A DNA stretch of 60,083 nucleotides, filler included, from Dugesia japonica (lineage: Eukaryota), in NCBI GenBank assembly GCA_001938525.1. It is 4 parts of 4 records of this genome, joined end to end, with 100 filler letters (N's around TTAATTAATTAA, not from the genome) between each part and the next. Parts side by side here need not be neighbours in the genome. Positions count along the whole stretch, not along the records: positions 1 to 25,744 come from MQRL01544292.1; 3 more parts are not named here. One strand, written 5' to 3'. The position numbers and the translations under genes were made by a program. Positions 14,481 through 25,262 of the stretch are shown piece after piece. Position 1 is the stretch's first letter; each line of letters starts with the position of its first letter. The notes beneath the pieces were generated by a model that worked only from the letters and a program-made list of their open reading frames with translations, did not search any database and had not been told where the DNA came from.

Positions 14481-14852
14481 GGCCACTTGTGAATTTTTTT
14501 TTACATAGAAGTATCACAGAATTTTTAGAAATTGTATAGATGTCACTAAATATTTTATAAAATTGCATAGAAGTCAATAATTTTTTTTATGAAATTGCAT
14601 AGAATTCACAAAATATTTTATGAAATTTCATAGAAGTCGATAAAGTTTTCAAAATCCTATGTAAAACAATGGGAAAATAATTAAAAAAAAGTGTATAGAA
14701 GTCATAAAATAAGTTTATGAAATTTCATAGAACTCGCTAAATATTTTTTGAAATTGCATAGAAGTCACTAAATATTTTATGAAATTTCATAGAAGTCGAT
14801 AAATATTTTATAAGATTGCATAGAAGTTATAAAAAAACTTTCACAAGTGGCC
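14481..14852. mobile_element. MITE-like element with internal ~30-bp tandem repeats
   Basis: Inverted ends GGCCACTTGTGAA / TTCACAAGTGGCC enclose about 10 copies of AAATT(G/T)CATAGAAGTCA..AAATATTTT. Confidence 0.65.
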
Positions 14853-14889: not shown

Positions 14890-16010
14890 TATATCTTTAT
14901 TAGCAGCAGTATTTTTGACCAAAACTTTGTCTCCAATTTTAGAATGTTTTTTTGTAATTCCATAATATTATGACTAATTTCATCTTGATCAATCCTATTT
15001 TTTACTGTATTTCCATGTTTCTCTTAAATTTTCACGAATATTCCAATCTCGTGAAATTTCTTTTCAAAACCAATTTCCACTGGGCTTTATTTGATATGTA
15101 GAATTTGTCATAAATTCTACTTCTAGGAGTATATCTGTCCAATATTTATGAATATAATCTCTTATAGTTAGAAATCGCCTTTCGATTTGTCCATTACTAG
15201 AATGATGATACGGGCTTGAAAATTTTAATTCTATTTCATGTTTTTCTATCAATTCTTTAACCAAACTCGATTCAAATTATCTTCCTCTATCACATAAAAA
15301 AAATTTTAGGTTCCCAAAATTTCAAAATCTATTGATTTTTTAATGTATTTTCTACAGTTTTTTAATTTGATCAATAACTTATATTAATGGGATATGATTG
15401 CTAAATTAATTTATAATACCCATTATATATTTTATTTCATTTTATTGTTTTTAAACGGTTCACAAAATTCAATATATAATTTGAAATGTATCTGTAGGCA
15501 ACATTTTAATTATGTCTTCCTTTATTTTTGAAGTTGAAGGTTTCCTTTTTTGTCAGTCTTATTATCAGTTTTCCATATAAAATTGTCTCGAAAAATATTC
15601 GTGAGCCTATTTTGATCCGTCATGACATAATAATTCATTAGTATAATTTATAAATTTCACTAATTTCTTTTGGGATCCAAGTTTAATTTTGAATTGTTTA
15701 AACAATATTTTCAATTAATTTAAATTATAGATTTTTCAAAGTTTAAGTTGTCTTTAATAACATCAATTTAATTACATCCTTCTTGCCATTTACAACCATC
15801 ATTTTTTTTAACATTAGTGCTAATGTTAGTTTTATTTTTCCAGATTTCTGTTCTTTATGTGAAGTCTAGTATTGAACTCAGGTTTCACAATCTATTCTTG
15901 AGAGAATCAGCATTCAGGTATTCTTCACTTTTAATATCCAAACTGCTAAGATGGTTGATTGAAGCCTGAAATTATGGTGTTTTTGGTCTTCAGCATAAAC
16001 GCTTTTGCTT
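14890..16010 (-). mobile_element. Ty3/Gypsy pol remnant (RNase H-integrase)
   Basis: ELKFSSPYHHSSNGQIERRFLTIRDY is the integrase SPYHP.SNG..ER motif; flanks are degenerate. Confidence 0.8.
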
Positions 16011-16326: not shown

Positions 16327-16767
16327 TTTATTTTTAATTTGTCATCTTTTCGATATAAATGTGTTATTTTATTATAAATGTGTATTTTTTTCAAAAAAAT
16401 NNNNNNNNNNNNNNNNNNNNNNNNNNNNNNNNNNNNNNNNNNNNNNNNNNATCTTTTCGATATAAATGTGTTATTTTATTATAAATGTGTATTTTTTTCA
16501 AAAAAATAACTAATTATTTCCTCTAATAAAAAAATAATTAAAAATGAGGAAAAATATTCCTCATAATAAAGGAAACATTTTTTTAATAAAAAGAGGAAGA
16601 AATCCTCTTTTTTAATTTAGTTATATTCCTTTTAATGAGGATAATAAATTCCTCTTTTATTTTTTTTTATTATTTAAGAGGAAATAATTAGTTATTTTTT
16701 TGAAAAAAATACACATTTATAATAAAATAACACATTTATATCGAAAAGATGACAAATTAAAAATAAA
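16327..16767. repeat. Long terminal palindrome / imperfect hairpin of the pPolB element
   Basis: 16451-16524 is the exact reverse complement of 16677-16750 (74 bp). The interior pairs imperfectly around GAGGA-agaaa-TCCTC (centre ~16600). 16344-16400 duplicates the left arm across an N gap. Confidence 0.9.
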
Positions 16768-17049: not shown

Positions 17050-17770
17050 AGTCTAATTATTCTTCACATTTAAGTTGTTAATTAAAATAATTATTCTTTA
17101 GATTATAGATTTAAATAAAAGTTATTGAAATAATCTAATTATTCTTCACATTTTAATAATTTTTCTTAGATCAAAGATTAAATAAAAATTAATGAATTAA
17201 TCTAATTATTCTTTAATTAAAGATTAAAAATAAAAAATTAATGAATTAATCTAATTATTCTTCACATTTAGATGTAATTAAAGATTAAAATAATTATTCT
17301 TTAAATTAAAGATAATAATAAAAATTCTTCACATTTTAGATTTTAATAATTATTCTTTTAATTAAAGATTTTAATAAAAATTCTTCACATTAGATTTTAA
17401 TAATTATTCTTCACATTTAGATTAATCTAATTATTCTTCACATTTAGATTAAAATAATTATTCTTTAAATTAAAGATAATAATAAAAATTCTTCACATTT
17501 AGATTTTAATAATTATTCTTTTAATTAAAGATTTTAATAAAAATTCTTCACATTTAGATTTTAATAATTATTCTTTTAATTAAAGATTTTAATAAAAATT
17601 CTTCACATTTAGATTTAAATAATTATTCTTTAAATTATAGATTTTAATAAAAATTACTGAATTAATCTAATTATTCTTCACATTTAGATTAAAATAATTA
17701 TTCTTTAAATTAAAGATNATAATAAAAATTCTTCACATTTAGATTAAAATAATTATTCTTTAAATTAAAG
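17050..17770. repeat. Subterminal tandem repeat array (core TTCTTCACATTTAGATT and AATAATTATTCTTTAAATTAAAGAT)
   Basis: More than a dozen shuffled copies of two or three short modules, followed by a (TAA) microsatellite. Confidence 0.85.
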
Positions 17771-18189
17771 ATAATAATAAATAATAATAATAAATAATAA
17801 ATAATAAATAATAATAAATAATAATAATAAATAATAAGATAATAATAAATAATAATACCACATTCACAATAAGTATGTGGTATCACCAAGTTATATTTTA
17901 AAAAACTAACTTCAATTTTAATATAATAATTTGGATTAAACTCGTTTATTGTTTCGTTGTTTAAAAAGTTAGCATATATTATTGTTAATATCTTTTTGAT
18001 TATATAATTTATTTTCATAATTAGCTTCAAAAGATGTATCATAAATATATCTATTGTCACATTTAACTTTTAAACAAATAAGACGGCAACAAAAAAATTA
18101 AAAAACTATATTATGGTAACTTTATTTTTAAAATATCTTCTGTTGCATTCGGTATTTTCTTTTTAACAATTAACATTTTAGAGTGTCTC

Positions 18190-18549
18190 TCATAATTTTT
18201 TATTTTTTAAAGTGTCTTTTAAAAATTTATATTCATATTCAACAATTTTAAATAAAATGTAAAAAAATANTATAAAAATTAATAAATCTATAATGTTACT
18301 TTGAGATATTAATTTTATATTATGTTCAGATTTTAATTCTATTATTTTATCTTTCATTATTTCAACAGTCTTTTTTGCTAGTAAGTATGGGTAATAAATA
18401 TATTTAATTATTTGTTGTTGTTCAGCTGGTGAAGCATTTAATGCTAAATCATATTTTGTTTGTAAATCATTTTTAAAATCATTATCTTTAAGTATTTCTT
18501 TTAGAATTTTTTCTAGCATTTTCTTTAACAAATAATTCTTCATAACCAT
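18190..18549 (-). CDS. Hypothetical helical protein of the pPolB element
   Basis: 119-aa ORF co-oriented with pPolB; start preceded by TATAAAAAATG; contains one N. Confidence 0.5.
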   Translation of the reverse strand: MVMKNYLLKKMLEKILKEILKDNDFKNDLQTKYDLALNASPAEQQQIIKYIYYPYLLAKKTVEIMKDKIIELKSEHNIKLISQSNIIDLLIFIXFFYILFKIVEYEYKFLKDTLKNKKL

Positions 18550-18995
18550 TTTTTATATTTTCATCAATATTAGTTTCATTCTTTATATTGCCGGCTATTA
18601 TAGTTGAATTAAGTACTCTTGTTCTAGTTTTTGGTGCAGAATTAATAATTGCATTTCTTTTTTCTGTTAATGTTGGTTTTTTTAATTTCTCTTGTATTAA
18701 TTCAAAATTATTAATTTTTACATTAAAACAGTAATCTCCAAATTGATTTTTAATGAAAGTATTTGTTTTTTCATCATAAAAATATTTTACTCTTTTATAA
18801 ATTTTTCTTGGTGGTTTTATATTTAAGTCTCTAAATGCTTTATTTATTTTGTTGATTGAAACATTTAATTCTTCTGCAATAATGTTATCTTTTAATGTTG
18901 GATTTTTTTTTAATTTCATTGAATTTTGTTATTAAATCAATCTTTTCTTGTTTAATAAATGTGAGTGGATTGAAATAATCTGCTGAATCTGCCAT
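18488..18995 (-). CDS. Putative HTH DNA-binding protein (frameshift in an A9 run near 18905)
   Basis: KKNPTLKDNIIAEELNVSINKINKAFRDL is HTH-like. The upstream ATG at 18995 (MADSADYFNPLTF...) joins the ORF if one A is removed from the homopolymer. Start preceded by TATATAAAATG. Confidence 0.6.
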
Positions 18996-19030: not shown

Positions 19031-22000
19031 TCATGTTTCACAGTTGAGTGTTTTATTTATTTTATCTAATCTTAAATGCCATGTGTTGCACAAAGAACAG
19101 AAATATTGATTTCCATGTGGCCATGTTCTAGTTCCATTGTCTTCTATTATTCTTTTATCACTATAACCTGTTAAAGCAATTTTCTTTTGAGAAATTAATT
19201 CAATTTGATGCAATGTTGATTTTAAAGAATAATTTGTGCCGTGTATTATTTTCTTGGGATCTTTTAACACAGAATCAAATTCTTGCATTCCAATTTTATT
19301 GAAACTTTGTACACCTTTATGTTTTTTATTAAAATTAATCTCACTTCCTTTATTATTATTTGTGTATTCATATGCATAAGATTTAGGTTTTATAAAATCA
19401 CATTTAAGTATTTCAGAATTAGGCATTTCATCTTTCATCTGAAATAGATTATCTCCAGTTAAAGAATTTAATTTTTCCAGGTTATCATTTCCGGTGATCT
19501 CAACGAATACGGAATCTGTGTTTTTTATTATCAATGGAAATCCACAATTGAATGTTCCATCTTCGGTTTCAATGTCATATACATCTTCTGTGTTTTGTCT
19601 TAAAAATTTAATACTTTGAGGATTAGTAGTTATTTCAGATTTTGTTTCTTGTAGTTTGAAGTCAGCTGTAATAATTAAATTCATTCCTAAAATTGTTCCT
19701 AGATAATATGCTTTAGACAACGATATTTTATCTGTAATTGTTTTATTAAAAATGTTAGATTTAAATTTATTATTTAAAGATATTAATGTTTTAAATTTAT
19801 TATGTAATAATTTAGTATCCAATGTTAGATTCATAGGTTTAATTTCTTTATTGTTTATATCTAATAATGAATGGTCTTCTGTAACATCGACAATGCCCAT
19901 GTGTGTTCTTATTCTATAAATCTTTTTATTTGTAGTGTGTTTAATTACTTTTTTCAATGGAACCCAGTTACTTTTAGTCCAAATTTCATAATTTTCTGGA
20001 TAAGAATAATACTTTACCTGGTCGCATAAAGCAGTGTTCTTTATATAATTTCCGGAGATCTCTGAAATCTTTTTAATAATAATATTTCTTCCTTTTCTTA
20101 GTAACACTGGAGTATCAGATGTAACACTGTCAGAGTAATGAATTTTATAATTTTCATTTCCAATATTTGGTTCTAATTGGTTATATACAAAATTGTACAT
20201 TACTTCTTTAGCATATTCTAGGATAGTGAAACCTAGATATGGAAATTTGTTATATTTTAAATTTGTTTTCGACATGTGCATTACTCCTGTGTGACATAAT
20301 ATTTCATCATTTAACGAAAAACATTTACTATCTATATAGCTAGGTTTACTTGCAAATTTTCGGAAATCTTTGTCAGTTCCGACAATTTCTATGCTACATC
20401 GATTTCTAATATTTTCTAGAGTTTTCCCGTAGAATGAATTATTCATCAATTTAAAGAAGTCAACTCCAAATTCATCTTTATTTCTTTTTGATATAGTTCT
20501 TTGGGTTATATTAAATAGAATATAATCTTTTAGCCATGGTGAAGTCGGTAGTTCATATTTAGAATGTATAGTTTTTAGTTTGATTCCTAATTGTAGATAA
20601 AGATCTAATGTTGAATCGAGAATTATATAATTTTTCTTATCGAGTTGATTCATTGTAAGTTTAATATTTTTATCTGTTAATTTTCTATTAAAACTTTTTT
20701 GATAATTTGTTAGCATATCATTTGTAATAAGTATTCTATCAGGTGCTAATGGGAAATATTTAGTTTTATCATGTAGTTCTTTTGGGTAAACAAGATCAAC
20801 TTCATAGAGATAATTAATTGTTTCTGTTGAGATTTCATATTCTAGATCTTTGGATTTAATGAATTCACCTGTTGGTAATGGTTTTGTCATGCACGATGCA
20901 TAAAGTGAATTTGCATCTAGATATTTTATATGTCTATTTTCCATTATATTATTAACATTAATTTCTTGACCTGAATTCATCATTTTAATGAGATCTTCAA
21001 AATCTGATTTATTTAATTCTCTAGTATCTGGATTTTTAATAATATTATGATTGAATACTTGACGTTCACCTTCTTCTCCTGAATAACCGCCGCGTACTCC
21101 GCGTTCGAATTTTAAGAAAATATCATAAGTTTCTGGTTTTGCAAATTTTAATTTTTGTCTTGTAAATCTCATACCAGCATTCCATGTTAATCCTGGTGAT
21201 GTATAACAATAACATGGATCTATTTTATAATTATTTAAACATAGTATTCTGAAGTTTTCAATATATTCCATTAAAATTAAAACATCTAGTTTCATATAAT
21301 GCAACATGTAATTCCAGAGATTAATGTGCGAGGTGCTTAGTTCAGTTTTAAATGCTTCATATTCTTCGTTGGATATTCCTTTTTGTTTTAGCGTGCTAAA
21401 GAAATCTTCTTTCTCTGGTATTTTCTCGGATTTTAATAATTGCATGACTTCTTGAATATTGTTATCTTTTACATAATCATATGGAAATAATGCTTTTTGA
21501 TTTTTATTTAATGTTTTTCCCATTTTCTCTATAGTAGTTGGACATAATCTGTAAGAATCAAGGAATCTAATATTGTTAAATTGAAATGAGATATATTGAT
21601 CATCTGAATGTGGAATTATTTTCTTAATACTTTTTGNNNNNNNNNNNNNNNNNNNNNNNNNNNNNNNNNNNNNNNNNNNNNNNNNNTTTGGATTTTTATT
21701 TAATAATTCTATGAAAAATAAATGATTGTCATATCCCATTGCATTATGAAAGTAAAATGGAATAAATAGATTCTTGATACTTTTATCTTGTAGATTACAA
21801 TATGAATGTGCATAGCCTCAGGGTTCACCGTTAAAATGATTGTGATCTATAACAAGATTTTCTGTTATTTCTTGATCACAGTATCTACATAATTGTTCAG
21901 TATGCTCTGGGATAGGACCAATAAATGAAGAATGTAACATATCAAATTTAACATTTTTTAATTGTCTGTTTATTTTTTCGAGAAAGTTAATAAATTCATA

Positions 22001-23332
22001 TACAACATTTTCACCTGAAAATTCAAAATATTCATCTTTAATTAGATCTTGATATTCTGATTTTAAATATATTCCAAGGCTAATCGGTTTTTGTATATTT
22101 AAATTATTTGTGTACGATTCGAAATCGCCATATAAAACAAATGGCATTTTATTAATAAAATAATTATTTTTATATTCAAAATATTCTTCATTTGGAAATT
22201 TAACTTCAGCTGGTTTGTGTAGTATACATTCTTGTTGGTGATTAAATAAAACATGTACACTTGAATATTGATTCAAGCAACCAAGACAAAGACAATTATT
22301 TTTTTTAACATTAAATAAAGTTTCAACATTTCTAACTAATGAATAATGATTGTTATATATCAAAAGATTACATTTATTTTCTTCTGGTTCAGGTTTTATT
22401 TCATAGTGCGAAATATGAAGTGCTGTAACTCTATTATCTAACTCGAAAACATTTATTTTTAAATTGTTTAATTTTTCTAATTTCTTGACATCTTCAATTG
22501 TAGATGGAAAATTAATTCCTTTTATATTTAATTCATTTAAATGTGGAATATAATTATTTACTCTTCTTGCGTTATTTCCATATTTATATTTATGTGCGAG
22601 AACTGAATACAGTAAACATTTATTATCTTTATTTTCAATATTAATAATTCCATATTTATTTTTATATTCATCTGGTAATACGCAATAAGTTGCTCCGGCT
22701 GTCGAATGATATATTTCAAGTTTAAGAACAAAATCCAATATGTAATCAAAATTCCAGTTAGATTCATTTCTCTCTGCGTCCTCCATAAAGTTCTGTACTT
22801 CTTCTAACATTTCATTTACTTGTTGCTTATATGTATCGAGCACATAAACTATTCTATTTTTAGTATATGAATAAAATGTTCTAAGTTTTCCTTCTTTACT
22901 ATATTGTGAATTAACTCCTATTCGCATTTTTAACACGTTGGTTGCTTTAAAAAATTCAGATACCATATTTTTAAATTCATAACTGGCTGGATAAATTGTT
23001 CTATATTCATATTTCGCAATAAATCTTTTCATTTCTAATTTACTATCTTCTAATATTCTAATATGGTAATCAGGATATTTTTCTTGTGTAAATATTTCAT
23101 AGATTGGTAAACCAATTTTTGTTTCTATTGGGATTTTTTCTTTTTTTCCACATGTACTTTTTGATTGATGAATATTTAATGATTCTAAAGTTTTAAATCT
23201 TCTTTTACATCCTGTGCATAATACATAATCACTCAATGAAATAAAAACACATTTTTTAAATCTAATGTGCGTATTTAATGCTCCTTTTGATTTAAATAAA
23301 CCATTGCAATTTTCGCATGTGAATACACTCAT
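19031..23332 (-). CDS. polB: Protein-primed family B DNA polymerase (Polinton/adintovirus-type) with N-terminal Zn fingers, TP-like region, OTU-like protease and EndoVII; intein-containing; one in-frame TGA at 21818-21820
   Basis: ExoI YGDFES, ExoII HNAMGYD, ExoIII YMKLDV, motif A YLDANSLY, motif B KLMNNSFYGK, motif C YSD|TDS, KPKSY, KHKGV, DKR. The 504-aa and 902-aa ORFs are in frame and are bridged by GEP*GYAHSYCNLQ. Confidence 0.93.
19520..20128 (-). mobile_element. Mini-intein (203 aa) in pPolB motif C
   Basis: Block A SVTSDTPVLL, block B VDVTEDHSLL (TxxH), block F VYDIETEDGTFNCG, block G IIKN followed by +1 Thr. Removal restores YSDTDSVFV. Confidence 0.93.
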
Positions 23333-24289
23333 TTTCTATAGTAATAATTTAATCAAAGTTATTTATTTTCTTAATTTAAAATTTATATATATGTTGCACT
23401 TTTTTATCATATTATTATGTAACATTTATATAAATTTTTAAGCAATTAATGCAAATTTTTGTAGCACTATTGCTGAGTGAATATTCCATTTTTATTTAAC
23501 TTTTTATTTTTTTTTAAAAAAATTGTTACAAAAAATATGTTACCGTACTGGACCTGAGGGAATATACCTATTTATATCACTACTTATAATTAGTAAAATG
23601 GTTTGAAATTTTTTAAATTTGAATGTGAAATTTAATTAATTAAGTTCATTAACCAATATAGATTGGTTAAAATAATTTTAATTGGGAAAAATATGCTTCG
23701 ACACCATTATGTGTATTAGTTAAATTTAAAATCTCCATAAATTGTTTATTGATTATTACAAGTCTTTTCTTAAAAAATAAAAATATGNNNNNNNNNNNNN
23801 NNNNNNNNNNNNNNNNNNNNNNNNNNNNNNNNNNNNNNNNNNNNNNNNNNNNNNNNNNNNNNNNNNNNNNNNNNNNNNNNNNNNNNNNNNNNNNNNNNNN
23901 NNNNNATTTAACACCATGTAAAATTTTAACTTTAATTTAAAATATCTTTGTTTTACATATATATTTATTTATTTTTCTAACTTTATAATTTTTAAAATTT
24001 TATATTTGAAAAATTTCAAAAAAAAAAACTTAATATTAAATATAAAAATTAAAAAATCTCAAACATCCAAAATTCATGAATCGATACTCACAATGTGTAT
24101 GTAAAGGTTTCCGTCTTTCACGTATATATGACATGATTTATAAAATTAAGATATATGCATGCCAGATTTTTTGATTAGTTAAGTCATTATTGATTAATAA
24201 CTGACTTATAAATTAAAAATTGACTCATAATTATTACTTTACATATGGAAGTTTAGAAGATGCCTATTCATCATTGCATGCTTTTTATT

Positions 24290-25262
24290 CAATCATAGCA
24301 CAAAATCTGCCGAAGCAATCAGAATTATTTGCGAGACTAATGGGATTGGAACAATAACTGAAAGTTCTTGTAGTGAGTGGTTTCGACACATTAGAAGAGT
24401 GGACTTTGACATGAAAGATAAGAAGCGTACCTAGTGGCCACATGAGATAAGTTCGCATGACTACAAGGGTTATTGAAAGTAGGTTCGACAACGTCGAGAG
24501 TAGAACTAGTGACAAGATTACATATTACTCAGAGCACCGTAATTCGATGCTTGTATCATTTAGAACAACTTAAAAATAATGAAAATGGGCTTCTCATGAT
24601 TTATCCGAGAAACACATAGCCAACCGTCTCACCTTTTACTTTTCATTGCTCAAGAGACACAAACGCAAATCTTTTATGTATTGAATTATGACTGGTGGCG
24701 AAAAATGGATATATAATAAACCAAATCGCAAAAAAGAACCAATTAGATCACGGTTGAAACGAGATAGTCACAGTCACATAGTCCTTCTGCCTATCTTGTG
24801 GAACAGACAAGGAGTTCTGTATTTTGAACAATTAAAACCGTCTCAGACTATCACTGTGGAATTTTATTCTCGATGATTGAGGTTTTTGATGGAGCAATTG
24901 GTTGAGAAGCAGCAAAATTTGGTGATTATTCTGTTACTTATGTAACATTAAGAACTCTGGAAACCTTAAAGGAAGTACAATTAAATATTACACCTGGCAT
25001 ATTCTCCATATAATACCCCTTCGTATTTTTACTTATTTAGTTCTTTGTAACACAACCTTTTTGAAACACTATTTCACAATGTTGAAGAAGTGCAGAAATT
25101 CATTGATGATTTCATTCAAGACATTATTCATCGGGGTATCCATTTTTGCCTGAAAGATGACAAATAATTAACGAAAATATTTGATTAAATGTACTGTTAT
25201 TTATAATAATTTTTATAAAAAATTTTCTCTTAAAACGATGGAAACTTTTGCATATCCCTAAT
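24290..25262 (+). mobile_element. Degenerate mariner (Tc1/mariner) transposon
   Basis: IMTGGEKWIYN..PNRKK (VTGDEKW), LWNRQGVLYFEQLKPSQTITVEFY, a YSP-like remnant, and a 3' end AACTTTTTGCATATCCCTAATA resembling a mariner TIR + TA. Confidence 0.85.

What the first reader, a model, noticed from the sequence alone, without database searches (positions are those of the whole stretch)
19520..20128. Intein inserted in the catalytic motif C of a protein-primed DNA polymerase in an apparently animal genome
Seen: motif C is split as YSD|SVTSDTPV...VDVTEDHSLL...VYDIETEDGTFNCGFPLIIKN|TDS. The 203-aa open insert has Ser1, a TxxH block B, a block F Asp, terminal Asn with Lys rather than His in the penultimate position, and +1 Thr. 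Established: this YxD|TDS site is the one used by archaeal PolB and Mimivirus-type giant-virus PolB inteins, which sit in RNA-primed polymerases. True inteins are essentially unreported in metazoan nuclear DNA and I do not know of them in Polinton pPolBs. Inference: the intein homed from a giant-virus PolB into this pPolB during co-residence in a cell, making the polymerase dependent on protein splicing.
Basis: partly seen in the sequence, partly recalled or inferred. Interest (0 to 1): 0.92.

Follow-up and report, generated by a model that had tools for sequence, protein, structure and literature searches.

The report
Mini-intein splitting a Polinton DNA polymerase
A real self-splicing protein element (intein), of the type known from giant-virus and archaeal DNA polymerases, sits in the catalytic centre of a virus-like (Polinton-type) protein-primed DNA polymerase gene in a very AT-rich eukaryotic genome, but this copy is broken and nothing shows that the host is an animal.

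Summary
Window 19520-20128 (minus strand) encodes a 203-residue in-frame insert that splits motif C of a protein-primed family B polymerase (pPolB) as YSD|...|TDS. It is a true intein: NCBIfam intein_Nterm E 3.8e-10, a confident Hint-fold model whose best PDB matches are all inteins, and Ser1, TxxH, terminal Asn and +1 Thr. The penultimate Lys is the family norm (147 of 179 relatives), not a defect. It is a mini-intein with no homing endonuclease.

Its relatives sit mainly at the homologous YGD|TDS site of delta-like, giant-virus-type PolBs (227 of 264 fetched). Six metagenomic pPolBs from Polinton or Polinton-like-virus contexts carry a LAGLIDADG-bearing version at exactly the same site. The intein therefore most likely arrived with the element and was not acquired at this locus.

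This copy is a remnant. The gene has one in-frame stop and one N run. No capsid, ATPase, protease or terminal repeats lie nearby. The host is unidentified; a Mos1-type mariner remnant is the only hint of an animal.

I rate it a new variant of a known kind, of moderate to high interest. I found no description of a Hint-fold intein in a pPolB in the searchable literature. One possibly relevant 2006 paper could not be read.

The parts
19031..23332 (-). [quoted passage not shown] It is broken by one in-frame stop and holds one N run (18 codons). No frameshift was detected.
   Evidence: ORFs and translations. Pfam PF03175 DNA_pol_B_2 E 7e-20. 1449 pPolB relatives with E<=1e-3, the best 33-44% identical. 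Counts of stops and N runs, and presence of the Exo I-III, A, B and KxY motifs.
23162..23323 (-). Two C2H2-type zinc-finger motifs at the N-terminus of the pPolB
   Evidence: Pfam zf-C2H2 and zf-C2H2_4, weak (E 0.006, below the cut-off). The nearest full-length relative P0122 carries precomputed zinc-finger families PF12171 and PF12874.
20186..21595 (-). Region matched by the Pfam pPolB profile (exonuclease and palm/fingers, up to just before motif C)
   Evidence: PF03175, residues 15-484 of the 868-residue stretch downstream of the N run
20129..20137 (-). N-extein half of motif C (Tyr-Ser-Asp); the Asp is the -1 residue
   Evidence: contiguous SDTDS in the intein-less relatives
19520..20128 (-). 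Mini-intein, 203 residues, class 1 type (Ser1 ... Asn203), no homing endonuclease
   Evidence: NCBIfam TIGR01445 E 3.8e-10, 40.6 bits against a cut-off of 24.5. AF2 model pLDDT 87.4, pTM 0.84. All 31 Foldseek PDB matches with E<=1e-3 are inteins or intein-like Hint domains. Best BFVD matches are giant-virus DNA polymerases. No LAGLIDADG family hit.
20090..20128 (-). Intein block A (Ser1 nucleophile, DTP motif)
   Evidence: S1, V2, T6 and P7 invariant in alignment A1; Ser at position 1 in 251 of 251 relatives
19859..19897 (-). Intein block B (VDVTEDHSL; T83 and H86 form the TxxH motif)
   Evidence: G78 and V82-L88 invariant in A1; the same block is present in the pPolB-hosted relatives
19604..19816 (-). 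Linker where relatives carry the LAGLIDADG endonuclease. It keeps a helix plus strands that align with the last part of the endonuclease domain of P0139.
   Evidence: residues 134-203 align to P0139 residues 1259-1334; helix 134-146, strands 151-161, pLDDT dips at residues 111-130; intein lengths 203 against 337-348
19520..19588 (-). Intein blocks F and G (VYDIETE ... FNCGFPLIIKN; Asn203 is the last residue)
   Evidence: V183, Y184, D185, E187, T188, G191, F193, G196 and N203 invariant in A1. The FNCGFP signature and 13-residue spacing are shared with all six other pPolB inteins and six classical PolB inteins.
19511..19519 (-). C-extein half of motif C (Thr-Asp-Ser); the Thr is the +1 nucleophile
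   Evidence: +1 Thr in at least 162 of 179 relatives

Best explanation
The insert is a genuine class-1 mini-intein of the 'pol-c' allele type, the type that occupies the YGD|TDS catalytic motif of archaeal and giant-virus family B polymerases. Here it sits at the homologous YSD|TDS motif C of a Polinton/Maverick-type protein-primed polymerase.

Mechanism in an intact copy (inferred from conserved residues and established intein chemistry, not shown here):
1. The precursor is translated with motif C split by 203 residues and is therefore catalytically dead.
2. Ser1 makes an N-O acyl shift.
3. The ester is passed to Thr+1.
4. Asn203 cyclises and releases the intein.
5. An O-N shift re-joins ...YSD to TDS..., which restores the metal-binding motif.

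The homing endonuclease that full-size relatives carry has been deleted down to a short remnant. This copy cannot home and can only travel with its host gene.

The intein was most probably already resident in this lineage of Polinton/PLV polymerases before integration. Ultimately it was exchanged with giant-virus-type PolB inteins through the shared xxD|TDS target.

At this locus the element is a recently dead fragment: the polymerase gene has one in-frame stop and no partner genes.
For: Intein identity:
- TIGR01445 is above its cut-off.
- The Hint-fold model is confident, and every significant PDB match is an intein or an intein-like Hint domain.
- There are 1552 homologs with E<=1e-3.
- The catalytic positions are invariant in A1.
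- Family-wide, Ser1 is found in 251 of 251, Lys-Asn at the C-terminus in 147 of 179, and +1 Thr in at least 162 of 179.

Site homology:
- Relatives in classical PolBs read YGD|S...N|TDS.
- This is the Mimivirus / archaeal pol-c / N. equitans position (PMC549080; NEQ068 hit).
- Named structural matches are the PolBs of Megavirus, Pithovirus, Marseillevirus, HaV01 and Klosneuvirus.

Resident in pPolBs:
- Six other pPolBs carry 337-348-residue LAGLIDADG versions at the same site.
- Their loci hold DJR capsid, rve integrase or A32-like ATPase genes.
- P0004 is the nearest N-block neighbour (57% identity).
- All pPolB inteins share FNCGFP and the same spacing.
- Intein GC3 (0.18) equals extein GC3 (0.14-0.19).

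Polinton-type polymerase:
- PF03175 matches.
- The nearest relatives P0124 and P0128 lie beside DJR capsid, A32 and rve genes.

Dead fragment:
- One internal stop in 1434 codons.
- No other element genes and no terminal repeats.
Against: - Pfam Intein_splicing is only E 0.016, below its cut-off.
- No C-terminal intein HMM hit.
- Splicing itself is untested.
- The phylogeny is weak. Bootstrap is 31% for window+P0004+P0139+P0155 and 3% for all six pPolB inteins then in hand.
- The C-terminal block is closest to classical PolB inteins (P0266, P0017: 23 of 39 identical, against 16-19 of 39 for the pPolB ones). A separate, direct transfer from a giant-virus PolB into this pPolB lineage is therefore not excluded.
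- The best full-length matches are mini-inteins in classical PolBs (P0001, 41% over all 203 residues).
- No read data exist to exclude misassembly.
Confidence: 0.8

Rival explanations
1. One reading: the intein homed directly from a giant-virus PolB into this particular pPolB lineage, independently of the other intein-bearing pPolBs, during co-infection of one cell.
For: - 227 of 264 fetched carriers are classical PolBs.
- The window's last 21 intein residues are nearly identical to those of the classical PolB intein P0266.
- The best full-length match is a classical PolB mini-intein of the same architecture (P0001).
- Intein-bearing pPolBs are scattered over the whole extein tree (5 of 122), and the window groups with intein-less P0121-P0125. 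Several independent gains are therefore plausible.
- The downstream 18 nt of the target are 15 of 18 identical between the window and P0001.
Against: - The window intein has no endonuclease.
- The nearest N-block neighbour is pPolB-hosted.
- The FNCGFP signature is present in every pPolB intein but in only 6 of about 220 others.
- No giant-virus sequence lies in the window.
- Scattering on the extein tree is equally explained by homing among pPolB alleles followed by loss.
Confidence: 0.25
2. The scaffold is not from an animal. It may be an AT-rich protist or early-diverging fungus, or a contaminant of an animal assembly, so the 'first metazoan intein' angle falls away.
For: - No host gene, tRNA or diagnostic RNA is present in 25.7 kb.
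- GC of 24% is unusually low for an animal.
- The intein-bearing pPolB relatives for which a sample could be read come from ocean and other metagenome assemblies.
- The gene is not on record in the contig collection.
Against: - A Mos1-type mariner remnant is present (HTH_48 E 1.9e-7, Transposase_1 E 3.1e-8). From general knowledge this is commonest in animals.
- Coding density is low, with microsatellites and satellite arrays, as in a large eukaryotic nuclear genome.
- Many pPolB relatives lie on contigs of 1-9 Mb.
- The gene's GC3 of 0.14-0.19 matches the AT-rich flanks, so the element is adapted to an AT-rich host and is not a stray contaminant.
Confidence: 0.4
3. The insert is not an intein but one of the nuclease-domain insertions already described in Polinton pPolBs (HNH, VSR), or a non-splicing Hint-like domain.
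For: Polinton pPolB2s of nematodes, oomycetes and molluscs do carry inserted HNH or VSR domains (PMC10748475). Pfam Intein_splicing is sub-threshold.
Against: - The fold is Hint, and the best matches are bona fide inteins.
- All splice-site residues are present and family-invariant.
- No nuclease family matches.
- The insertion falls exactly between residues of a contiguous catalytic motif, which only a splicing element could tolerate.
Confidence: 0.03
4. Assembly artefact: an intein-containing fragment of a giant-virus PolB was joined into a pPolB contig.
For: The assembly is a draft with many N runs. No reads are available.
Against: - Both junctions are in frame and at the canonical residue.
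- Composition and GC3 are uniform across the junctions.
- Seven independent contigs from different samples show the same pPolB-intein architecture.
- The flanking exteins are pPolB on both sides.
Confidence: 0.03

Closest known systems
PolB inteins of giant viruses (Mimivirus/Megavirus, Heterosigma akashiwo virus 01, Klosneuvirus, pithovirus-like and marseillevirus-like genomes) at YGD|TDS
   Same: - The same position in the homologous motif C.
- Ser1, C-terminal Asn and +1 Thr, and mostly Lys before the Asn.
- Hint fold with TM 0.70-0.86 to the model.
- 27-33% identity to named viruses and 35-47% to metagenomic relatives.
- Many are mini-inteins of 208-250 residues with the same linker remnant.
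   Different: Their host is an RNA-primed, delta-like PolB (PF00136/PF03104; one search shows Pol delta as the best PDB match to their exteins). The host here is a protein-primed PolB (PF03175) of a Polinton-type element, and the -2 residue is Ser, not Gly.
Archaeal pol-c inteins, including the Nanoarchaeum equitans split PolB intein (NEQ068) and PI-TkoII
   Same: The same insertion position III (PMC549080). NEQ068 is the best PDB sequence match (E 0.008). 2cw7 and other archaeal inteins are fold matches.
   Different: They are much more distant in sequence (about 10-16% identity in the structural alignments). The hosts are thermophilic archaea, and these inteins are mostly large with an endonuclease, or split.
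Metagenomic pPolB-hosted inteins found here (P0003, P0004, P0061, P0139, P0155, P0386)
   Same: - The same host family, the same site (xxD|S...N|TDS), and the same FNCGFP signature and spacing.
- 44-57% identity in the N-terminal splicing region.
- Where flanking genes could be read, the loci show Polinton/PLV neighbours.
   Different: They are 337-348 residues long, five of them with LAGLIDADG-type domain annotations on record. Most have His before the terminal Asn. Their pPolBs belong to other branches, several with an Endonuclease_7 N-terminal domain.
HNH and VSR nuclease-domain insertions in Polinton pPolB2 (nematodes, oomycetes, molluscs; PMC10748475), read as traces of 'intein invasions' in PMC11161782
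   Same: Selfish-element-derived insertions inside Polinton polymerases, used as markers of horizontal transfer.
   Different: No Hint fold or splice-site residues are described for them. They sit at other positions and stay in the mature protein.
Inteins in endogenous giant-virus-like DNA polymerases on nuclear scaffolds of Klebsormidium, Tetrabaena and Hondaea (PMC10710043)
   Same: A viral-polymerase intein found inside a eukaryotic nuclear assembly as part of an endogenous viral element.
   Different: Those are classical PolBs of integrated giant viruses in algae and protists, not a pPolB of a Polinton-type element.
Kapitonov and Jurka 2006 (PNAS 103:4540), the original Polinton paper
   Same: From memory only, unverified: it may mention an intein in the polymerase of a fungal (Glomus) Polinton. 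If so, the kind is already on record.
   Different: The paper is not held in the library, and no searchable paper repeats such a statement.

Membership tests
Intein (class 1, Hint fold) | In-frame insert inside a conserved host motif that is contiguous in insert-free homologs | tested here: met
   YSD|203 aa|TDS against SDTDS in P0122/P0123 and TDTDS in P0124
Intein (class 1, Hint fold) | Hint (horseshoe beta) fold | tested here: met
   AF2 pLDDT 87.4, pTM 0.84. All 31 PDB matches with E<=1e-3 are inteins or intein-like Hint domains, the best at 7e-7.
Intein (class 1, Hint fold) | Nucleophile (Ser/Cys) at position 1, block B TxxH, C-terminal Asn, +1 Ser/Thr/Cys | tested here: met
   S1, T83, H86, N203 and T+1; invariant in A1 and dominant family-wide
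Intein (class 1, Hint fold) | Penultimate His (block G) | tested here: not met
   Lys202. However, Lys is present in 147 of 179 family members and His in only 14, so His does not define this subfamily.
Intein (class 1, Hint fold) | Curated profile matches | tested here: inconclusive
   TIGR01445 (N-terminal region) passes: 40.6 bits against 24.5. Pfam PF14890 scores 15 bits against 35.8. No C-terminal model hit.
Intein (class 1, Hint fold) | Autocatalytic protein splicing | not testable with these tools
   Inferred only, from conserved residues and fold
Full-size (homing) intein | Embedded homing endonuclease (LAGLIDADG or other) | tested here: not met
   No endonuclease family in Pfam. 203 residues against 337-348 in the pPolB relatives; only a remnant aligns.
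pol-c allele of PolB inteins | Insertion between the Asp and Thr of motif C (YGD|TDS) of a family B polymerase | tested here: met
   The same residue pair (PMC549080). The host is a protein-primed, not an RNA-primed, member of family B.
Protein-primed PolB (PF03175) | Profile match and Exo I-III, A, B, C and KxY motifs | tested here: met
   PF03175 E 7e-20; all motif patterns present
Protein-primed PolB (PF03175) | N-terminal terminal-protein and vOTU-like domains, as described for polinton pPolBs (PMC11161782) | not tested
   A Cys-containing and a His-containing motif typical of relatives are visible by eye in the N-terminal part. No profile or fold test was run.
Complete Polinton/Maverick element | Companion genes: DJR major capsid, minor capsid, A32-like ATPase, Ulp1-like protease, rve integrase | tested here: not met
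   tblastn with genes of six related loci finds only the polymerase, plus one weak rve-like remnant (E 0.027). Relatives do have these genes.
Complete Polinton/Maverick element | Long terminal inverted repeats flanking the element | tested here: not met
   No inverted repeat brackets the gene within the piece. The upstream end may lie beyond the piece.
Metazoan nuclear DNA | Host genes or RNAs diagnostic of animals on the same scaffold | tested here: inconclusive
   Only a Mos1-type mariner remnant. No tRNA, no Rfam family above threshold, and CpG o/e 0.94.

The most novel reading that the evidence does not exclude
The piece really is animal nuclear DNA, and inteins in pPolBs have not been described. 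It would then be the first true (extein-ligating, Hint-fold) intein recorded in a metazoan genome. It would also be the first documented case of one intein allele family shared between RNA-primed polymerases of giant viruses and protein-primed polymerases of Polintons/PLVs. That would imply intein traffic between the two virus classes when they meet in one cell, and a lineage of Polintons whose replication depends on protein splicing.
Probability: 0.3. Interest if true: 0.78.

Novelty: new variant of a known kind. Interest (0 to 1): 0.6.

Why it matters
- **Intein reach.** Inteins are held to be absent from animal genomes (PMC5784728). In eukaryotic viruses they are catalogued in giant viruses. 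A bona fide pol-c-type intein inside Polinton/PLV-type protein-primed polymerases extends their range to a second major class of eukaryotic DNA viruses and virus-like transposons.
- **A possible transfer route.** The six-residue catalytic motif shared by two otherwise very different polymerase families may act as a common landing site. Many Polinton-like viruses and virophages are hypothesised to parasitise giant viruses (abstracts listed), so this would give a concrete, sequence-level marker of genetic exchange between them.
- **Annotation.** Polymerase genes of Polintons that seem to have 'lost' motif C may simply carry an intein.
- **Limits.** This copy is a broken remnant. It says nothing about present-day function in its host, and the animal claim is unproven.

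Tried and rejected
**Alternative genetic code or mitochondrial plasmid origin: rejected.** The gene uses TGG for Trp 8 times and has only two in-frame TGA, one of them terminal. Its relatives are Polinton-type, with capsid, ATPase and integrase neighbours. A mariner remnant lies beside it.

**Finding the source contig by exact protein look-up.** It is not on record.

**Naming the host.**
- Cluster names and the accession of the nearest NCBI relative in the literature gave nothing.
- The Rfam search gave one sub-threshold snoRNA-like match.
- There are no tRNAs.
- Pfam on ten flanking ORFs gave only the mariner, a weak rve and weak HTH hits.

**Other element genes in the window.** tblastn with genes from L002, L004, L007, L009, L010, L026 and L027 found none. 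No terminal inverted repeats were found.

**Intein-bearing pPolBs in IMG/VR.** All 13 PLV-like pPolB loci lack the intein.

**Phage collection.** Only two weak partial matches.

**Resolving the intein tree.** A neighbour-joining tree on 114 columns has low bootstrap support. Per-block identities give conflicting nearest neighbours. I did not concatenate the N and C blocks, because of the rule against stringing stretches together.

**Literature.** No searchable paper describes a Hint-fold intein in a pPolB. Kapitonov and Jurka 2006 and two Krupovic and Koonin reviews are not held.

**A suspected GIY-YIG (Penelope-like) fragment at 1614-1832.** It gave no Pfam hit and was dropped.
Full report

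Two lapses occurred.
- My first notebook entry recorded the bounds of the two open stretches of the polymerase gene. That implies where the in-frame stop lies.
- In my early private reasoning I also noted what relatives carry at that column.

I stopped doing this, deleted nothing, used it for no repair, and do not repeat either item here. In this report the gene is treated as one part.

**1. What is in the sequence**

The piece (1-25744) is about 24% G+C and has very few long reading frames. The exception is a minus-strand gene at 19031-23332. It has 1434 codons, one internal stop, one N run of 18 codons and no detected frameshift.

Several results identify it as a protein-primed family B polymerase:
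- Its product matches Pfam PF03175 (DNA_pol_B_2, 'organellar and viral') at E 7e-20.
- It has patterns for Exo I-III and polymerase motifs A, B and KxY.
- It has about 1450 relatives with E<=1e-3, the best 33-44% identical.

Motif C reads ...KIHYSD, then 203 extra residues, then TDSVFV.... The nearest full-length relatives without the insert read SDTDS or TDTDS without a break.

**2. The insert is a real intein**

- NCBIfam's intein N-terminal model matches above its cut-off: 40.6 bits against 24.5, E 3.8e-10.
- Pfam's Intein_splicing is only sub-threshold (E 0.016), and no C-terminal model fires.
- An AlphaFold2 model built on an alignment with 14 homologs is confident: pLDDT 87.4, pTM 0.84.
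- All 31 significant PDB matches to the model are inteins or intein-like Hint domains, including a TFIIB mini-intein, the Aes123 PolB1 intein, and VMA, RadA, CDC21 and DnaB inteins.
- In the viral structure library the best matches are the DNA polymerases of Megavirus courdo11, Pithovirus LCPAC302, Marseillevirus LCMAC201, Heterosigma akashiwo virus 01 and Klosneuvirus: TM 0.70-0.86 on the query, 27-33% identity.
- Ser1, the DTP of block A, T83/H86 of block B, D185 and neighbouring residues of block F, and Asn203 are invariant across alignment A1.
- Across the fetched family, Ser is at position 1 in 251 of 251. Asn is last in 163 of 179, and in most of the rest the alignment is merely offset by one. 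The +1 residue is Thr in at least 162 of 179.
- The residue before the Asn is Lys in 147 of 179 and His in only 14.

No endonuclease family is detected. Residues 134-203 align with the tail of the LAGLIDADG region plus the C-terminal splicing block of the full-size relative in P0139. The model shows a helix and short strands there, with a low-confidence stretch at residues 111-130. This is a mini-intein that keeps a stub of a deleted endonuclease.

**3. Relatives of the intein**

Two very large searches with the intein gave 250 hits (E<=1e-3; 5.8 billion proteins) and 1552 hits (1.8 billion representatives). The best were E 5e-30 to 6e-33, at 35-47% identity.

Of 264 fetched carriers:
- 227 are classical family B polymerases (PF00136/PF03104).
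- 5 are pPolBs.
- 32 are other proteins or fragments, among them type II topoisomerases and an XRN-type exonuclease.

A sixth pPolB carrier, P0386, came from the junction-centred search.

The exteins of the classical carriers match Pol delta best among solved structures (E 4e-50). One carrier lies on a 199-kb, gene-dense, mostly ORFan contig, as expected of a giant virus.

In these proteins the intein sits at YGD|S...N|TDS. That is position III, the 'pol-c' allele, which Ogata et al. described for Mimivirus, archaeal PolI and the split N. equitans polymerase (PMC549080). NEQ068 is indeed the best PDB sequence match.

**4. Inteins in other pPolBs**

P0139 and P0155 (Tara Oceans scaffolds), P0004, P0003, P0061 and P0386 are pPolBs or pPolB fragments. 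Each carries a 337-348-residue intein at exactly the same place: xxD|SV...FNCGFPL..N|TDS. Five of the six have LAGLIDADG-type annotations on record (PF14528); P0004 has none.

Their loci look like Polinton or Polinton-like-virus genomes:
- a DJR capsid gene next to P0155;
- an A32-like ATPase in the P0004 contig;
- DJR capsid plus rve integrase beside P0003 on a 761-kb contig, and DJR capsid beside P0061 on a 101-kb contig.

All seven pPolB inteins, including the window's, share the FNCGFP signature and a 13-residue spacing between block F and the terminal Asn. By contrast, 208 of 219 other inteins have a spacing of 14. Only six classical PolB inteins share FNCGFP: P0266, P0290, P0303, P0306, P0111 and P0032, all confirmed as PF00136 proteins.

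Intein-positive pPolBs are rare:
- 2 of the 120 best pPolB relatives;
- 0 of 13 IMG/VR loci.

**5. Phylogeny and its limits**

I analysed the contiguous N-terminal splicing region alone (114 columns, 246 sequences). The window intein joins P0004, P0139 and P0155 in a pPolB-only group. P0003 and P0061 fall a few nodes away, among classical PolB inteins.

Support is poor:
- Bootstrap is 31% for the group of four and 3% for all six pPolB inteins then in hand.
- P0004 is the nearest neighbour in 46 of 100 replicates.
- Per-block identities disagree. P0004 is best in the N block (60 of 106). The classical PolB inteins P0017 and P0266 are best in the C block (23 of 39, against 16-19 of 39 for the pPolB ones). 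P0266 shares the window's last 21 residues almost exactly.

On the extein side (265 columns, 122 sequences), the window polymerase groups with the intein-less P0121-P0125. The five intein-bearing pPolBs span the whole tree.

My reading is as follows. One intein lineage, the FNCGFP subtype of pol-c, is shared by a few giant-virus-type PolBs and by several separate pPolB branches. This fits horizontal spread by homing into the shared xxD|TDS target. The number and direction of the transfers cannot be resolved with these data.

**6. State of this copy and its surroundings**

The closest polymerase relatives lie next to DJR capsid, A32 ATPase and rve integrase genes (P0124, P0128, P0127). The polymerase is therefore of Polinton/Maverick type.

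In the window, however:
- tblastn with the genes of seven related loci finds only the polymerase, plus a weak rve-like remnant at 15136-15450 (E 0.027).
- No inverted repeats bracket the gene.
- With one in-frame stop, the locus is a solitary, recently inactivated fragment.

The gene's GC3 (0.14-0.19) is the same in intein and exteins and is as AT-rich as the flanks. I infer that intein and polymerase have shared a long history in an AT-rich host lineage.

An alternative code does not explain the stop. Trp is TGG eight times, and there are only two in-frame TGA, one of them terminal.

**7. The host**

Nothing in the piece identifies it:
- no tRNA;
- no Rfam family above threshold;
- no host protein domain;
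- the gene is not on record in the contig collection;
- the cluster tables carry no taxon names.

A degraded Mos1-type mariner (HTH_48 and Transposase_1), the satellites and the microsatellites indicate a large eukaryotic nuclear genome and lean towards an animal. An AT-rich protist or early-diverging fungus is not excluded. I put 'animal' at roughly 0.5-0.6.

**8. Comparison with the literature**

Known:
- PolB inteins at YGD|TDS in Mimivirus, HaV01 and many phycodnaviruses (PMC549080; PMC5784728 lists 67 DNA-polymerase inteins in eukaryotic viruses).
- Inteins in endogenous giant-virus-like polymerases on algal and protist nuclear scaffolds (PMC10710043).
- HNH and VSR nuclease insertions in Polinton pPolB2 (PMC10748475). 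These were interpreted as possible traces of intein invasions (PMC11161782).
- The statement that metazoan genomes lack inteins (PMC5784728).

I found no searchable paper that describes a Hint-fold intein in a pPolB. From memory alone, the original Polinton paper (Kapitonov and Jurka 2006) may mention an intein in a fungal Polinton polymerase. It is not held, so this remains unverified and tempers the novelty claim.

**9. Verdict**

The giant-virus affinity and the dependence on splicing are reasonable. Acquisition in this gene and host, and the animal setting, are not shown.
- Best explanation: a pol-c-type mini-intein inherited within a Polinton/PLV polymerase lineage, now fossilised in a broken, solitary gene copy.
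- Novelty: new variant of a known kind.
- Interest: 0.6.

Noticed in passing
window 24231-24873 (+): Degraded Mos1-type mariner transposase in pieces across frames (Pfam HTH_48 E 1.9e-7; Transposase_1 E 3.1e-8). It is the only hint in the piece about the kind of host.
   Followed up: partly
window 15067-15450 (-): Remnant of an rve-type integrase (SSPYHHSSNGQIERRF...). Pfam rve_3 E 0.049; tblastn E 0.027 to the integrase next to the related polymerase P0128. It could be the element's own integrase or an unrelated retrotransposon.
   Followed up: partly
window 16327-16767: Foldback or MITE-like structure in 12-15% G+C DNA. It has perfect 74-nt inverted arms (16327-16400 and 16694-16767), a second 142-nt imperfect palindrome inside, and an N run after the left arm.
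   Followed up: no
window 17086-17860 and 14521-14827: Satellite arrays: a 55-bp unit (about 7 copies, 87% matching) running into ATA-rich microsatellite about 1.2 kb 3' of the polymerase, and a 31/63-bp array further on. No inverted copy lies on the other side of the gene, so they do not look like terminal repeats of the element.
   Followed up: partly
window 18190-18928 (-): Two overlapping small ORFs (143 and 119 aa) directly 3' of the polymerase. Pfam gave only weak HTH-like hits, and there is no match to genes of related elements. Whether they belong to the element is unknown.
   Followed up: partly
proteins P0269, P0277, P0295, P0298, P0335, P0319 (topoisomerase II) and P0338 (XRN-type exonuclease): The same intein family (E 1e-18 to 1e-22 to the window intein) also sits in non-homologous host genes, probably of giant viruses. 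The family therefore moves between unrelated host proteins, not only between polymerases.
   Followed up: partly
L011 10001-11638 (P0002) and similar 545-590-aa proteins (P0006, P0007, P0022, P0027, P0068): Many classical PolB carriers are called as short proteins that start only 35-75 residues before the intein, with no polymerase N-half next to them on a 199-kb contig. These could be split PolB genes (as in Nanoarchaeum) or gene-calling artefacts.
   Followed up: no
whole piece 1-25744: CpG observed/expected is 0.94 and GpC is 0.97, so there is no CpG depletion. The piece holds several N runs, and one single N lies in the small ORF 3' of the polymerase.
   Followed up: no
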